DNA of 64,000 nucleotides from Ginglymostoma cirratum (taxonomy: Eukaryota): contig JAHRHZ010000043.1 of NCBI GenBank assembly GCA_024137785.1, forward strand, positions 3,389,275-3,453,274, read 5' to 3'. The notes beneath the pieces are model-generated. The model made no database searches. It was given only the letters and a program-made list of their open reading frames with translations, and was not told the DNA's origin. A program made the position numbers and the translations under genes. The first letter of the stretch is position 1, and each line of letters starts with the position of its first letter. Positions 39,275-58,887 of this stretch are shown here, piece by piece.

Positions 39275-39471
39275 TCAGCAAGGACTTGACTGTGTGGGGG
39301 CATTCGGTGGGATTTTTGAAGATCTGTTCTCTGACGTCAAAGCGTTCCCTTGAATCAGATCCTTGAAGAGCCGTTTACGAGTTAAATAAAACAAAACTCC
39401 AATCCCCAGAAAACTTGCTAGAGGGACACAGAGACCGAGAATGACAGCTCCCTGGTCAGGCTTCACTGTAA
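39275..39471 (-). CDS. Exon 8, transmembrane helix and cytoplasmic tail, with stop codon
   Basis: Acceptor ttctttctgtttgcag|. Encodes the hydrophobic helix AVILGLCVPLASFLGIGVLFYL, then RKR stop-transfer, and ends ...TQSSPC*. TGA at 39277-39275. Confidence 0.88.
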
Positions 39472-57400: not shown

Positions 57401-58887
57401 CCCCTTCCTCACTGATAACAACCCACAAGCTGGTTAAAACCATCCACGCTCTTCCCTCCTCCTCACCCACTCCACAACAATCCGTTCAATCTGCCCACCT
57501 CTACCTCAATGTCCCCAGGTACAGCAACCTTCCCTGAGCAAGATGCATCAGCAGACTCCATTTGGATCCATTAATAGGGAACATGGGAATTGCCAACTAG
57601 CTCCTAGTGCCAAGCCCTGTCGGTCCAATGGCAGGATCTGAGCTACCTGAGAGAGGCTGGTCTTCGCTGAACAGGGTCAGGTTAAGCCAGGGTCCCTTTA
57701 CTGTCTACTGCCACAGCTAGACCCTCAGTTCAAACTCCCAACACGTGTGGATAGACACAAACCAAACTGCACATCCCAGAGGAGGGTTCTTTCTGCAGAC
57801 GAAGTACTGGACCGAGATAGATGGGTTCTTGATTATCAAGGGTTACAGGGAGAAAGTGGGAGAATGGGGTTGAGGAACTTATCAGATCAAGTCTGCTCTG
57901 CCATTCAATGGGCTGAATGGCCTAATTTCTGCTCCTGTGTCTTATGCTCTTAACCTCAGCAAATAAAAGAAGCTAACACTTAGCTCTGGGGATTTTCAGT
58001 CACCAAATAAATTAATATACTGGGAAATAGGTAGGGTTTGTTTTTATACAATTAGCTTGCATTTATTGATGAAAAAATTAAACCCACCGAACGAGGGAAT
58101 TTTCAAAGACAGGGAGAAGGCCATTCTTGTCACTCTGCTTGGTCAAATATTCTCAAATTGGCCCCACTGCCTTGTACTACTGAAAGGCCCCTTCATTGTT
58201 GCTCAGACATTTATCCATCTTGTTTAAACAAACAATATTCTTCACCTTTAACCGCTTCTGGAAGCCAAGTATCCCAAAGCACAAAACAAAAGCCTCTGTG
58301 CAAATTCCACTTTCTGTAAACTCTGACCCCACTCAGTAAGCTCTCAATTAGTCATTCTGTCATCATCTGTTCCAGAGCCAATAGAAACCTGATATTTTCC
58401 ACCAAAACATCTCATTTACGGAACATTATATTTTTAAACTTGCATTAGATTTATTCTAACTTAATAGTGGAAATAGTTTCAGAATCTCAAGTCCCCTTAA
58501 GGCTGAATTCTACAATTCTGGACTCATTCTTGTTGACCTGTGCTGTCCACTCTCTGCGGCTTCAACATCCTCTCCTCAACAAGGCATCCAAAGTGTGCAG
58601 AGCTGCAAAGACAATGAGGTATCTTCATTGGGTTGTAGAACATGTTCTGCATGAACATATTTGAATATTTCCCAGCAAAAGATAAAATGCACTTTTCTCT
58701 CAAATTCTGCACAACTAACTCAACAAAATCCCTACAATTCAAATGATGTTTAAAAATATGTATCTTGTTTTCAAAAGAGATATTGATTAACAAAGATTTT
58801 GAATTGACAAAAAGATTATAAGTACCTACCAGAATCTTGGATCAGTGCAGAGAAAGTAAAAATTAGGAAAGCAATTCTTGTCCTCAT
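39275..58887 (-). CDS. Vascular cell adhesion protein 1-like / MAdCAM1-like Ig-superfamily adhesion molecule, whole gene: join(58830..58887,56122..56400,52937..53254,51482..51763,49766..50041,46850..47125,41622..41897,39275..39471), 1962 nt, ~653 aa
   Basis: Eight exons join in frame with canonical GT-AG, all phase-1 introns, as typical for Ig domains. Architecture is signal peptide + 6 Ig + TM + tail. D1 has CxxxC/CxxxC and W-x-x-x-IDS, and the D1/D2 junction reads VYSFP (VCAM1 has IYSFP). Exact orthology (VCAM1, MAdCAM1 or a lineage paralog) cannot be determined here. Confidence 0.9.
39910..40245 (-). mobile_element. HE1-type SINE (intron 7)
   Basis: Reverse-complement V-domain and tail. 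Confidence 0.75.
40955..41161. mobile_element. Palindromic Penelope-terminus-derived mini-element (family B)
   Basis: ~80-bp near-perfect inverted arms gctggaaaagctcagcaggtctggcagcatctgtggaggagaaaacagagttaacgtttc. Related copies at ~8915-9085, 15850-16025, 19295-19410 and 56690-56825. Confidence 0.8.
41622..41897 (-). CDS. Exon 7, Ig domain 6 (repeat copy C)
   Basis: 276 nt, open frame, same splice sites as copy A. Encodes YGPRNVFIEGGGNVRERETLALTCLGDANPDANITWRRIDTG... Confidence 0.88.
42303..42601 (+). mobile_element. HE1-type SINE (intron 6)
   Basis: Full head, V-domain and gggattctatga tail. Confidence 0.88.
43020..44385 (+). mobile_element. Old CR1 LINE, long decayed ORF2 fragment
   Basis: Remnants include PGPDDIYP, gaaactacaggccagtgagttt (NYRPVSL) and LEYCVRFWSPHY. 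Confidence 0.8.
46185..46718 (-). mobile_element. CR1 3' fragment (similar copy at 44710-45135)
   Basis: Encodes HSLRIKGHQFMAEMRRKFFCQRV. Confidence 0.8.
46850..47125 (-). CDS. Exon 6, Ig domain 5 (repeat copy B)
   Basis: 276 nt, open frame, same splice sites as copy A. Encodes YGPRNVSIDGGGSARERETLALTCLGDANPAANVTWRRRETWSEQ... Confidence 0.88.
47335..48045 (+). mobile_element. CR1 3' fragment interrupted by an L2-tailed SINE (47487-47715)
   Basis: Encodes FTQRVVRVWNELPEEVVEAG after the insertion. Confidence 0.8.
48635..49422. mobile_element. Penelope fragment with 5' inversion spanning a 100-N gap (48933-49032)
   Basis: Minus strand encodes YIGETKRRLGDSFVEHL; plus strand carries the C-rich UTR and terminus 49080-49422. 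Confidence 0.8.
49766..50041 (-). CDS. Exon 5, Ig domain 4 (repeat copy A)
   Basis: 276 nt, acceptor ttctctgattaccag|, donor T|GTGAGT. Encodes YGPRNVSIEGGGNVRERETLALTCLGDANPEANITWRRRDTG...DDHGLYECVVENPLG. Confidence 0.92.
50150..50445 (-). mobile_element. HE1-type SINE (intron 4)
   Basis: Reverse-complement head and V-domain. Confidence 0.85.
51482..51763 (-). CDS. Exon 4, Ig domain 3 (I-set)
   Basis: Acceptor ...aaatacag|, donor T|GTGAGT. Encodes LSLSCGAD...ITWRK...STLYVEKLEPEDGGVYVCEIS (DxGxYxC motif). Confidence 0.92.
52280..52765 (+). mobile_element. CR1 3' fragment (intron 3)
   Basis: Encodes GLSYDERLDWLGLYSREFRR. Confidence 0.8.
52937..53254 (-). CDS. Exon 3, Ig domain 2 (VCAM/ICAM D2, C2/I2-type)
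   Basis: Acceptor cctctgcctttctttcag|, donor A|GTGAGT. Encodes SFPHHPKVELQSLNAVAGQTVTLRCSAQNLAP...WFRNHELL...EDRDITFTCEIRLGL. Confidence 0.92.
53557..54459 (+). mobile_element. Young 5'-truncated CR1 LINE inserted into an L2-clade LINE (53390-53556 / 54465-55120), intron 2
   Basis: 289-aa open ORF2 end (WAEKWQMEFNPGKCEVMHFG...DLGV...LYKTLVRPH); (ttctttg)n tail. Confidence 0.92.
56122..56400 (-). CDS. Exon 2, Ig domain 1 (integrin-binding, VCAM/ICAM N-terminal type)
   Basis: Acceptor ttctttgtctgttctccag|, donor T|GTAAGT. Encodes FVTGKENVLYISPTAPVVSVGQALELICETHCPNSKPSWEKTIDSMPG...YRCTTTCRGKFYSKDVYLAVY. Confidence 0.92.
58830..58887 (-). CDS. Exon 1, signal peptide MRTRIAFLIFTFSALIQDS
   Basis: ATG at 58887 followed by a basic N-region and hydrophobic core. 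Ends G|GTAGGT (phase 1) and joins exon 2 as ...QDS-A-FVTGKE. Confidence 0.8.

What the first reader, a model, noticed from the sequence alone, without database searches (positions are those of the whole stretch)
39275..58887. Complete shark VCAM1/MAdCAM1-family gene with a non-mammalian architecture: one integrin-binding head on a four-Ig stalk
Seen in sequence: SP + D1 + D2 + four I-set domains + TM + ~40-aa tail, ~653 aa. Established: mammalian VCAM1 has 7 Ig domains with two integrin sites (D1 and D4), and MAdCAM1 extends its D1-D2 head with a mucin stalk. Here there is only one D1-type domain, I found no S/T/P-rich mucin exon, and the extension is built from repeated Ig exons. Inference: this is an alpha4-integrin ligand in the oldest lineage with Ig/TCR-based adaptive immunity that reaches stalk length by a different route. 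It may be a MAdCAM1 ortholog without mucin, or a chondrichthyan-specific paralog.
Basis: partly seen in the sequence, partly recalled or inferred. Interest (0 to 1): 0.75.

Follow-up and report, generated by a model that had tools for sequence, protein, structure and literature searches.

The report
Shark MAdCAM1-type gene with Ig stalk
This is a complete shark gene for a cell-adhesion protein of the VCAM1/MAdCAM1 family, whose integrin-binding head sits on a stack of repeated antibody-like domains where land vertebrates have a mucin stalk.

Summary
The minus strand carries 8 exons, all AG/GT and phase 1: signal peptide, D1, D2, Ig3, three near-identical I-set exons, and TM+tail. They total 1962 nt (653 aa plus stop) and span exactly 39275-58887.

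The gap lies in the intron between the first two repeated exons, at a poly-G tract. The same ~57 bases stand on both sides of it, and no exon or frame is touched.

A 610-nt contig of a public run joins D1 to D2 exactly at the predicted borders. Splicing of the other exons was not shown, and Ig3 had no reads.

D1 keeps the four cysteines and the C-D-loop Asp of integrin-binding IgSF heads. In D1 and D1-D2 trees the gene lies outside a VCAM1 clade that includes a skate VCAM1. It lies on the side holding tetrapod MAdCAM1 and its gar, sturgeon and teleost relatives. Zebra shark and whale shark models have the same layout. Sturgeon has the same plan with 7 stalk copies.

Best reading: the cartilaginous-fish member of the MAdCAM1 lineage, with an all-Ig stalk and no mucin.

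The scan holds one other note, on this same stretch and not on other DNA.

The parts
58830..58887 (-). Exon 1: start codon and signal peptide (19 codons plus 1 base), with a GTAGGT donor in phase 1.
   Evidence: An in-frame TAA lies 11 codons upstream. The zebra shark model P0081 has the same signal peptide and the same junction residues. The junction to D1 is not shown by reads. The X1 contig runs 2 letters past the D1 acceptor, and its first 5 letters lie on nothing in the stretch laid.
56122..56400 (-). Exon 2: D1, the integrin-binding-type N-terminal Ig domain. It has four cysteines (C28, C32, C74, C78 of the exon peptide) and Asp44 in the C-D loop (motif IDS).
   Evidence: Its best solved relative is human VCAM-1 D1 (E 1.3e-6). 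It is spliced to D2 in X1 contig record 3.
52937..53254 (-). Exon 3: D2, a C-type Ig domain with an extra cysteine pair seen only in cartilaginous-fish orthologues and no strongly acidic loop.
   Evidence: (C1-set, 29.4 bits). X1 contig record 3 covers the exon exactly, end to end.
51482..51763 (-). Exon 4: Ig3, an I-set domain that is 34-39% identical to the Ig4-type exons.
   Evidence: No reads in X16. In X1 only an unspliced piece at depth 2.
49766..50041 (-). Exon 5: Ig4-type copy 1 (I-set), with 3 N-x-S/T sequons.
46850..47125 (-). Exon 6: Ig4-type copy 2 (I-set), with 3 N-x-S/T sequons.
41622..41897 (-). Exon 7: Ig4-type copy 3 (I-set), with 2 N-x-S/T sequons.
39275..39471 (-). Exon 8: juxtamembrane segment, TM helix, 35-aa cytoplasmic tail and TGA stop.
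   Evidence: It is 81% identical to the zebra shark tail and 95% to the whale shark tail. No Pfam family.
48933..49032 (.). Assembly gap inside the intron between Ig4-type copies 1 and 2. It is flanked on both sides by the same ~57 bases, including a poly-G run.
   Evidence: Not filled and not looked up.
41499..41987 (-). The stretch around copy 3 that is shared with the other two copies: the exon plus about 30-120 bp of intron on each side. The matching stretches are 46730-47172 and 49739-50131. The rest of the introns is unrelated.
   Evidence: 93.5%, 96.7% and 96.0% identity over 446, 393 and 350 bp.

Best explanation
The region is a complete, transcribed gene for a type I membrane protein of the integrin-binding IgSF family that holds VCAM1 and MAdCAM1. 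It is the cartilaginous-fish representative of the MAdCAM1 side of that family, not of VCAM1, which cartilaginous fish carry separately.

Shown: the gene structure, the D1-D2 splice, the conserved D1 residues, the tree position, and the same layout in other sharks.

Inferred mechanism: the protein sits on endothelium. The N-terminal D1 offers the Asp of its C-D loop (IDS) to the metal site of an alpha4 integrin on leukocytes, and D2 supports D1. The head is held away from the membrane by N-glycosylated I-set domains (Ig3 plus three copies of one exon) where tetrapod and teleost relatives have an O-glycosylated mucin segment. Without a mucin segment it should not serve as a selectin ligand.

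Stalk length is set by the copy number of one phase-1 exon. That exon has been duplicated, and kept alike, separately in several lineages. Skipping such symmetric exons probably varies the stalk further.
For: Structure: 8 exons, all phase 1, 1962 nt.

RNA: X1 contig record 3 (610 nt, depth 8, no mismatch) lies on 56122-56402 and goes straight on to 52937-53254. In polyA run X16 the reads over D1 and D2 all have the first mate on +, as expected for a minus-strand RNA in the usual stranded library.

Head: the four cysteines are present in 54, 54, 54 and 52 of 54 D1 domains, and the Asp in 53 of 54, including the window and 7 of 7 shark and chimaera orthologues. Human VCAM-1 D1 aligns with E 1.3e-6, with the IDS motif in register.

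Lineage, by score: of the 49 hits of the exhaustive D1 search, the best outside cartilaginous fish are proteins that NCBI names MAdCAM1 (turtle 68.8 bits). Named VCAM1 score lower: bat 45.1, coelacanth 42.9.

Lineage, by tree: in the D1 tree (54 rows) the VCAM1 side, which includes the two skate heads and P0044, is split from the MAdCAM1 side, which includes the window, at 100/98*. The D1-D2 tree of natural proteins (47 rows, 210 columns) gives VCAM1 100/99*, cartilaginous-fish clade 100/99*, ray-finned clade 98/94* and tetrapod MAdCAM1 95/98*. Both sides hold cartilaginous, ray-finned and lobe-finned members. An AU test rejects one clade of all cartilaginous-fish rows (lnL difference 27.7, p 0.0066).

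Layout elsewhere: zebra shark P0081 has D1, D2, Ig3, 3 Ig4-type domains and TM, at 81-92% identity per exon. Whale shark P0086 has the same layout from D2 onward. Elephant shark has 1+1 stalk domains, sevengill 2+2, white shark 1+2. Sturgeon P0006 has D1, D2, Ig3 and 6+1 Ig4-type copies with no mucin. Gar P0073 has D1, D2, two Ig domains, then an S/T/P-rich segment.

Stalk copies cluster by species, not by position.
Against: Sequence signals pointing to VCAM1. Against solved human proteins, D1 matches VCAM-1 (31.6 bits) better than MAdCAM-1 (18.7 bits). The IDS motif and the four-residue spacing from Trp to Asp are those of VCAM1, not the G-L-D-T of tetrapod MAdCAM1.

MAdCAM1 features that are missing. 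D2 lacks the acidic loop of tetrapod MAdCAM1: at most 3 acidic residues in 12, against 4-9. There is no mucin segment.

Limits of the trees. The D2 tree leaves the position relative to MAdCAM1 unresolved. In the D1-D2 tree the joining of tetrapod MAdCAM1 with the ray-finned clade has only 56/52 support. The AU test with D1 alone, the only one holding the window's own exon, gives p 0.058. The tested group was named after the tree was seen. No ICAM or jawless-fish outgroup was on hand, so the root is assumed. All comparators are predicted gene models, and P0044 has no name on record here.

Not tested. Synteny was not tested. Integrin binding, tissue and cell type were not tested.

RNA gaps. Ig3 has depth 0 in X16, where D1 and D2 have about 2. 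In X1 it has only an unspliced piece, so the six-Ig form may not be the main product in those samples. The junction from the signal-peptide exon to D1 is not shown.
Confidence: 0.6

Rival explanations
1. It is a third, ancient lineage of the family, or a cartilaginous-fish paralogue. On this reading it is related to both VCAM1 and MAdCAM1 but is orthologous to neither, and the true MAdCAM1 was lost in cartilaginous fish or remains unfound.
For: The D2 tree gives a three-way split. The branch that would nest the clade with MAdCAM1 relatives is weak (84/60, 56/52). The D1 loop mixes VCAM1-like and MAdCAM1-like traits. D2 has a lineage-specific cysteine pair and no acidic loop. No outgroup was on hand.
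Against: Gar and sturgeon proteins group with teleost head-plus-mucin proteins in D1-D2 (98/94*), and they share the shark plan of D1, D2, Ig and Ig4-type stalk, the last opening with Y-G/A-P-R/K-N. That links the shark layout to the bony-fish relatives of MAdCAM1. The D1 search found no second cartilaginous-fish group on the MAdCAM1 side among its 49 hits. One gene per lineage on each side is the most economical reading.
Confidence: 0.22
2. It is the shark orthologue of VCAM1, as the automatic name 'vascular cell adhesion protein 1-like' given to its relatives implies.
For: NCBI names for P0002, P0003, P0005, P0083 and P0084. The best solved match is human VCAM-1, and the IDS motif agrees.
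Against: The VCAM1 clade excludes it at 100/98* (D1), 99/97* (D2) and 100/99* (D1-D2). Skate P0110, named VCAM1-like, has two VCAM1-type heads and a VCAM1-like tail and lies inside the VCAM1 clade, so cartilaginous fish have VCAM1 separately. The same relatives are also auto-named hemicentin-2-like, contactin-6-like and MAG-like, so the names carry little weight.
Confidence: 0.05
3. It is an IgSF adhesion or receptor protein that no longer binds integrins, for example a homophilic or other-ligand molecule. On this reading the conserved Asp is a relic.
For: No binding data exist. D2 lacks the acidic loop that helps MAdCAM1 bind alpha4beta7 (the role of that loop is recalled, not from a call). 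D1 is below the Pfam ICAM_N cut-off (19.5 against 21 bits).
Against: The Asp and all four cysteines are kept in 7 of 7 orthologues from chimaera to sharks, which indicates purifying selection on the binding loop over a long time.
Confidence: 0.08
4. The three-copy stalk is an assembly artefact, either a collapsed or a duplicated repeat around the gap, and the true gene has a different number of Ig4-type exons.
For: A gap lies between copies 1 and 2, and its length is only estimated. The copies are 95-97% identical.
Against: Each copy sits in its own unrelated intron sequence. Likeness ends 30-120 bp outside the exons. The copies differ at 9-14 of 273 bases. Zebra shark and whale shark models also have exactly three copies. 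The gap's two sides repeat each other at a poly-G tract, which looks like overlapping contig ends.
Confidence: 0.03

Closest known systems
MAdCAM1 of tetrapods (mucosal addressin cell adhesion molecule 1)
   Same: A single N-terminal D1-D2 head directly after the signal peptide. Four D1 cysteines and the C-D-loop Asp. Same side of the family tree. Type I membrane protein with a short tail. Best non-shark matches of the D1 search.
   Different: No S/T/P-rich mucin segment. Turtle, alligator, platypus and opossum have such segments; this gene and its shark relatives have none. The loop motif is IDS, not LDT, and there is one more residue between Trp and Asp. The acidic D2 loop is weak, and D2 carries an extra cysteine pair. 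The stalk is made of I-set domains.
VCAM1 (vascular cell adhesion protein 1)
   Same: The IDS motif and Trp-Asp spacing match. It is the best solved relative (human VCAM-1 D1, E 1.3e-6). The extracellular part is all Ig. Stalk domains are I-set.
   Different: The gene lies outside the VCAM1 clade, which includes skate, gar, teleosts, coelacanth and tetrapods. It lacks the P-L-G-G stretch after the Asp, and its loop is one residue shorter. It has no second head (mammals, coelacanth, gar and skate have two or more). Its tail differs.
Sturgeon 'CEACAM5-like' P0006 and gar 'VCAM1-like' P0073
   Same: Same plan: D1, D2, one Ig domain, then Ig4-type domains opening with Y-G/A-P-R/K-N, then TM. Sturgeon also carries near-identical tandem copies of the Ig4-type domain. 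Same side of the tree.
   Different: Sturgeon has 6+1 copies. Gar adds an S/T/P-rich segment before the membrane. Their D2 loop is more acidic (5-6 in 12) and lacks the extra cysteine pair.
ICAM family
   Same: A weak match to Pfam ICAM_N (19.5 bits) and to ICAM-3 D1 (E 0.019). It is the same kind of two-disulfide D1.
   Different: The scores are well below those to VCAM1 and MAdCAM1. ICAMs use a Glu on a flat face, not an Asp on a loop (recalled, not tested). No ICAM sequence was on hand for the trees.

Membership tests
Integrin-binding IgSF heads (VCAM1/MAdCAM1/ICAM group) | N-terminal Ig domain with two cysteine pairs (C-x3-C near strand B, C-x3-C near strand F) | tested here: met
   C28, C32, C74 and C78 of the D1 exon. 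The aligned columns hold Cys in 54, 54, 54 and 52 of 54 D1 domains.
Integrin-binding IgSF heads (VCAM1/MAdCAM1/ICAM group) | Acidic residue in the C-D loop of D1 (Asp40 of VCAM-1 and Asp42 of MAdCAM-1; the numbering is recalled) | tested here: met
   Asp44 of the exon peptide aligns with the Asp of human VCAM-1 IDS. The column holds Asp in 53 of 54 domains.
Integrin-binding IgSF heads (VCAM1/MAdCAM1/ICAM group) | Match to Pfam ICAM_N (PF03921) above its gathering score | tested here: inconclusive
   19.5 bits against a cut-off of 21, E 7.7e-4, over nearly the whole profile.
Integrin-binding IgSF heads (VCAM1/MAdCAM1/ICAM group) | I-set fold of D1 with a protruding C-D loop, shown by structure | not testable with these tools
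No fold search was run.
Integrin-binding IgSF heads (VCAM1/MAdCAM1/ICAM group) | Cation-dependent binding to alpha4 (or beta2) integrins | not testable with these tools
   This needs a binding experiment.
MAdCAM1 | D1-D2 groups with MAdCAM1 and away from VCAM1 in a tree | tested here: met
   The split from VCAM1 has support 100/98* (D1, window exon included) and 100/99* (D1-D2). An AU test rejects a single cartilaginous-fish clade on D1-D2 (p 0.0066) but not on D1 alone (p 0.058). The root is assumed and no ICAM outgroup was included.
MAdCAM1 | S/T/P-rich mucin-like segment between the head and the membrane | tested here: not met
   The exons have an S/T/P fraction of 0.16-0.26. No 40-residue stretch reaches 45% in the shark orthologues, while turtle, alligator, platypus and opossum MAdCAM1 have such stretches. 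No further exon was found in the window. The intronic gap cannot be read.
MAdCAM1 | G-L-D-T-S/N-L loop motif | tested here: not met
   The window has T-I-D-S-M-P. All 12 rows named MAdCAM1 have G-L-D-T.
MAdCAM1 | Acidic loop in D2 | tested here: not met
   The best 12-residue stretch holds 3 acidic residues in the window, 2-4 in the shark and chimaera orthologues, and 4-9 in tetrapod MAdCAM1.
The scan's notes hold none of these names. No USE1 exon is in the window.
VCAM1 | D1-D2 inside the VCAM1 clade | tested here: not met
   It is excluded at 100/98*, 99/97* and 100/99*. Skate P0110 lies inside that clade.
VCAM1 | Loop motif D-x-P-L-G/N-G after the Asp | tested here: not met
   The window has D-S-M-P-G-K with a one-residue gap. 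15 of 18 rows named VCAM1 have Pro two places after the Asp, followed by L/M.

The most novel reading that the evidence does not exclude
The split between VCAM1 and MAdCAM1 predates the common ancestor of jawed vertebrates, and this gene is the shark MAdCAM1. If so, the ancestral MAdCAM1 was an all-Ig molecule (D1-D2-Ig3-Ig4-TM, as in elephant shark). The mucin stalk that makes it a selectin ligand and an 'addressin' would be a later addition in bony vertebrates, with gar showing both kinds of stalk. Stalk length would have been tuned again and again by amplifying and homogenising one I-set exon: two or three copies in sharks and seven in sturgeon. That would give sharks a dedicated alpha4-integrin ligand alongside VCAM1. 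It would make testable the question of whether tissue-specific lymphocyte homing is as old as antibody- and T-cell-receptor-based immunity.
Probability: 0.5. Interest if true: 0.7.

Novelty: new variant of a known kind. Interest (0 to 1): 0.5.

Why it matters
MAdCAM1 directs lymphocytes to the gut in mammals and is a drug target. In the library I could search, its history below tetrapods is not described. The one paper holding both 'madcam1' and 'cartilaginous fish' lists MADCAM1 for terrestrial vertebrates only (PMC7916592, passages read).

Databases name the shark gene and its relatives 'VCAM1-like', 'hemicentin-2-like', 'contactin-6-like', 'MAG-like' or 'CEACAM5-like', which hides the relationship.

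If the placement holds, three things follow. Sharks have two separate alpha4-integrin-type ligands. The mucin segment is a later add-on. And the same need, a head held far from the membrane, has been met in two ways: by glycosylated Ig domains or by mucin.

It also offers a clean case of one exon kept near-identical in three copies inside unrelated introns.

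Tried and rejected
Steps that led nowhere, and ideas I rejected:

- Word search with the D1 exon: blank. Its length window shuts out full-length relatives, so this says nothing.
- Solved-structure search with D2: only weak, generic Ig matches. VCAM-1 aligned at E 0.59, in the right place.
- An HMM iterated twice on the fetched proteins drifted into a generic Ig profile (925 domains). I went back to the first-round profile with a score cut of 60.
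- The top hit of the big search, P0001 from an electric ray, is an SRCR plus Ig-repeat protein whose score is a sum over 16 repeats. I rejected it as a relative.
- Rows dropped before the D1-D2 tree and the D2 residue counts: two Naja modules, one Mauremys module and Pterocles. They have tandem D1 domains or a partial D2.
- Promoter logic of mammalian Madcam1 (COUP-TFII motif from PMC9718832, passages read; NKX core and NF-kB consensus recalled): 0 composite sites and 0 NF-kB sites in the 2 kb upstream, against 0.22 and 1.0 expected. Uninformative.
- Synteny: no neighbouring gene in the window, no marker names in the scan's notes, and no USE1 exon.
- Assembly duplication of the three Ig exons: rejected.
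- A hidden exon in the gap: cannot be excluded, but nothing calls for one.
- Nurse shark plasma 'VCAM 1' (PMC9207270, passages read): it could be this gene's product or the true VCAM1. Its sequence is in supplements that are closed, so I could not tell.

Not in print: this claim rests on searches (listings and abstracts only) of PMC open-access papers and bioRxiv. Subscription journals are not covered.

Full report
WHAT IS THERE. Stop-free stretches on the minus strand and the sequence at their ends give eight exons with AG acceptors and GT(A/G)AG donors, all in phase 1. In plus coordinates they are:
- signal peptide, 58830-58887
- D1, 56122-56400
- D2, 52937-53254
- Ig3, 51482-51763
- three Ig4-type exons, 49766-50041, 46850-47125 and 41622-41897
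- one exon with the transmembrane helix, a 35-aa tail and the stop, 39275-39471

The lengths add up to 1962 nt, which is 653 codons plus a stop. An in-frame TAA lies 11 codons before the ATG. Pfam calls Ig3 to Ig6 I-set above its cut-off, calls D2 C1-set, and gives D1 only sub-threshold Ig and ICAM_N matches. tblastn of each exon peptide against the whole window finds no other exon of these kinds. The rest of the window shows only repeat-like ORFs. I never joined the exons into one protein for a search, a fold or a tree, and used natural full-length orthologues wherever a whole protein was needed.

THE GAP. The N run 48933-49032 lies in the intron between the first and second Ig4-type exons, 734 and 1808 bases from them. 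No exon or reading frame depends on it. Because these exons are all phase 1 to phase 1, any number of them keeps the frame. The same ~57 bases, with a run of 13-14 G, stand immediately before and after the Ns. That looks like two overlapping contig ends broken at a homopolymer. A nearby repeat copy that carries the same peptide motif as the gap's flanks has a GIY-YIG domain. The 39-aa piece beside the gap gave no Pfam hit on its own.

IS IT EXPRESSED AND SPLICED? No run on record as RNA held the stretch in the index, but two raw-read RNA runs of the same organism were offered. I laid four runs on 50500-56450, which covers D1, D2 and Ig3.
- In run X1, contig record 3 (610 nt, depth 8, no mismatches) lies on 56122-56402 and continues without a break on 52937-53254. 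This joins D1 to D2 at the predicted donor and acceptor and ends exactly at the D2 donor, with six more letters lying elsewhere.
- In the polyA run X16 (about a quarter of it read), the D1 and D2 bins have depth 0.5-2, all with the first mate on the plus strand. That fits a minus-strand RNA in the usual stranded library.
- Against the full model, the Ig3 exon has depth 0 in X16. In X1 it has only an unspliced piece at depth 2 that crosses its acceptor. Ig3 may therefore be skipped in those samples.
- The X1 contig also runs two letters past the D1 acceptor, and its first five letters lie on nothing in the stretch. So the junction from the signal-peptide exon is not shown. It is supported only by the identical junction residues in the zebra shark model.
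- Junctions beyond D2 could not be tested.

WHAT FAMILY? The D1 exon's best solved relative is human VCAM-1 domain 1 (E 1.3e-6), with the IDS motif and both cysteine pairs aligned. Human MAdCAM-1 (E 0.015) and ICAM-3 (E 0.019) follow. The word search with D1 was blank, and the family scans left the subfamily open, so I ran the exhaustive search with D1. It gave 49 hits at E up to 0.001. By their sources' names:
- The closest are 'vascular cell adhesion protein 1-like' models of basking shark, sevengill shark and elephant shark.
- Next come MAdCAM1 of turtle (68.8 bits), frog, alligator, lizards, birds, platypus and opossum.
- Then come teleost proteins with a head plus a mucin-like repeat.
- True VCAM1 scores lower: bat 45.1 bits, coelacanth 42.9.

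Across 54 D1 domains the four cysteines are kept in 54, 54, 54 and 52, and the loop Asp in 53.

ORTHOLOGY. A word search with the sevengill protein listed the orthologue in ten shark models under varied automatic names. A word search with coelacanth VCAM1 found a skate protein, P0110. P0110 has two VCAM1-type heads and a VCAM1-like tail.

The trees give these results:
- D1 with the window's exon (54 rows, 96 columns). All VCAM1 heads, including both skate heads and P0044, are split at 100/98* from a side holding tetrapod MAdCAM1, the teleost, gar and sturgeon relatives, and a cartilaginous-fish clade (98/95*). Within that clade the window is sister to zebra shark (99/92*).
- D2 with the window's exon (52 rows). 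The gene is again shut out of VCAM1 (99/97*), but its relation to MAdCAM1 is unresolved.
- D1-D2 from natural proteins only (47 rows, 210 columns, four rows dropped). Four groups emerge: VCAM1 100/99*, cartilaginous-fish clade 100/99*, ray-finned clade 98/94*, tetrapod MAdCAM1 95/98*. The joining of the last two has only 56/52 support.

Each side of the main split therefore holds cartilaginous, ray-finned and lobe-finned members. That is the pattern of two genes already separate in the ancestor of jawed vertebrates. An AU test rejects putting all cartilaginous-fish rows in one clade on D1-D2 (lnL difference 27.7, p 0.0066). On D1 alone it is borderline (16.0, p 0.058).

Limits: I named the tested group after seeing the tree. 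There is no ICAM or jawless-fish outgroup. All comparators are predicted models. Synteny could not be examined.

HOW IT DIFFERS FROM MAdCAM1.
- No exon is S/T/P-rich, and the shark orthologues have no mucin-like stretch, whereas turtle, alligator, platypus and opossum MAdCAM1 do.
- The loop reads T-I-D-S-M-P with the Trp-Asp spacing of VCAM1, not G-L-D-T.
- D2 has two extra cysteines in 7 of 7 cartilaginous-fish orthologues and in the window. At the first position none of the 40 other D2 domains has a cysteine, and at the second only one does. D2 also lacks the acidic loop of tetrapod MAdCAM1.

I therefore file the gene under the integrin-binding VCAM1/MAdCAM1 family and in the MAdCAM1 lineage by descent. 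It is not a MAdCAM1 by structure.

THE STALK. The Ig4-type exon is a generic I-set domain. Its best solved matches are contactin-2, MDGA1, DSCAM and titin, which explains the odd automatic names. The three copies differ at 9-14 of 273 bases. All but one of the differing codons lie in the first 49 of 91 codons, and the non-adjacent copies 1 and 3 are the most alike. Likeness ends 30-120 bp outside each exon, and the introns are otherwise unrelated. This confirms the scan's other note on this stretch.

Layouts across species:

| Species | Ig3-type | Ig4-type | Other |
|---|---|---|---|
| Elephant shark | 1 | 1 | |
| White shark, bamboo shark, horn shark | 1 | 2 | |
| Sevengill shark | 2 | 2 | |
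| Zebra shark, whale shark, this window | 1 | 3 | |
| Sturgeon | 1 | 6+1 | no mucin |
| Gar | two Ig domains in all | | plus an S/T/P-rich segment |

In a tree of these domains the copies cluster by species: horn shark 100/93*, white shark 100/97*, basking shark 98/86*, bamboo shark 98/92*, and the six sturgeon copies 88/80. They do not cluster by position. This means either repeated duplication or ongoing homogenisation. The window's unrelated introns favour old copies kept alike by gene conversion. Isoform models that lack Ig3, D2 or one copy fit skipping of symmetric exons. Each Ig4-type exon has 2-3 N-glycosylation sequons.

MECHANISM. This part is inferred. The protein would be an endothelial type I membrane protein whose D1 loop Asp binds the metal site of an alpha4 integrin. 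The head would be raised on a rod of glycosylated Ig domains instead of a mucin, so no selectin-ligand role is expected. Nothing here tests binding, tissue or cell type. A scan of the 2 kb upstream for the promoter logic reported for mammalian Madcam1 found nothing.

WHAT IS KNOWN. Cartilaginous-fish 'VCAM1' is mentioned in a BLAST survey that lists MADCAM1 for terrestrial vertebrates only (PMC7916592, passages). It is also mentioned in a nurse shark plasma proteome (PMC9207270, passages), whose sequence is in supplements I could not open. Four searches (listings and abstracts) found no paper that describes a fish or shark MAdCAM1 or this layout. Subscription journals are not covered. The gene models themselves are public, so the gene is not new. 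The new parts are its placement and the all-Ig stalk as the likely older form of MAdCAM1.

SPECIES. The source of the window is not given. Its exons are 81-95% identical to zebra shark and whale shark and 71-80% to bamboo sharks. It is therefore an orectolobiform shark outside the bamboo sharks. This is an inference.

The report therefore has no synteny and no fold comparison.

Noticed in passing
window 41499-41987, 46730-47172, 49739-50131: The three Ig4-type exons differ almost only in their first 49 codons. Codons 50-91 and the first bases of the downstream intron are identical but for one codon. The non-adjacent copies 1 and 3 are the most alike (9 differences of 273, against 11 and 14). 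This looks like patchy gene-conversion tracts.
   Followed up: partly
window 51097-51892: In the polyA run X16 a few same-strand reads lie in the intron just downstream of Ig3 (depth 0.6-0.95), while the Ig3 exon itself has none. In X1 an unspliced piece crosses the Ig3 acceptor. This may mean exon skipping, or an alternative end, in those samples.
   Followed up: no
window 53565-54434 (+) and 11844-12671 (+): Two nearly identical ORFs of 276-289 aa belong to a dispersed repeat. One of them lies in the D1-D2 intron and has no Pfam family. Depth there is 100-300 in polyA RNA on both strands and very high in the contig runs.
   Followed up: partly
window 55276-55474: A short repeat in the D1-D2 intron has depth about 3100 in X16 and many 'opposite strands' joints. 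This points to a very abundant hairpin-forming or SINE-like element.
   Followed up: no
window 25323-25778 (-), 22105-22962 (+), 48814-49165: Copies of an element that encodes a GIY-YIG nuclease motif (Pfam GIY-YIG at 24.8 bits on the first copy). The assembly gap sits in one such copy. It may be a Penelope-like retroelement (a recalled likeness, not tested).
   Followed up: partly
window 27939-28647: A minisatellite of 27/80-bp units (about 25 copies) runs across the second N run, 28482-28491.
   Followed up: no
window 18152-18453: A C/A-rich low-complexity array (periods 12-42) gives long His/Pro/Thr-rich pseudo-ORFs on both strands.
   Followed up: no
proteins P0007 and P0021 (frogs): Two frog MAdCAM1-type models carry the whole D1-D2-mucin module twice in tandem, so these MAdCAM1-type proteins have two heads.
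   Followed up: no
proteins P0004, P0010, P0011, P0025 (turtle, alligator, lizards): The membrane-proximal Ig domain of sauropsid MAdCAM1, after the mucin, scores 46-53 bits on the D1 profile and has a C-x3-C pair. It looks like a second D1-type domain and not like the shark Ig3 or Ig4 types.
   Followed up: no
proteins P0127, P0134, P0108 (zebra finch, anole, sea turtle VCAM1): These VCAM1 models have a single D1-type domain, so the two-head form of mammals, coelacanth, gar, teleosts and skate is not universal.
   Followed up: partly
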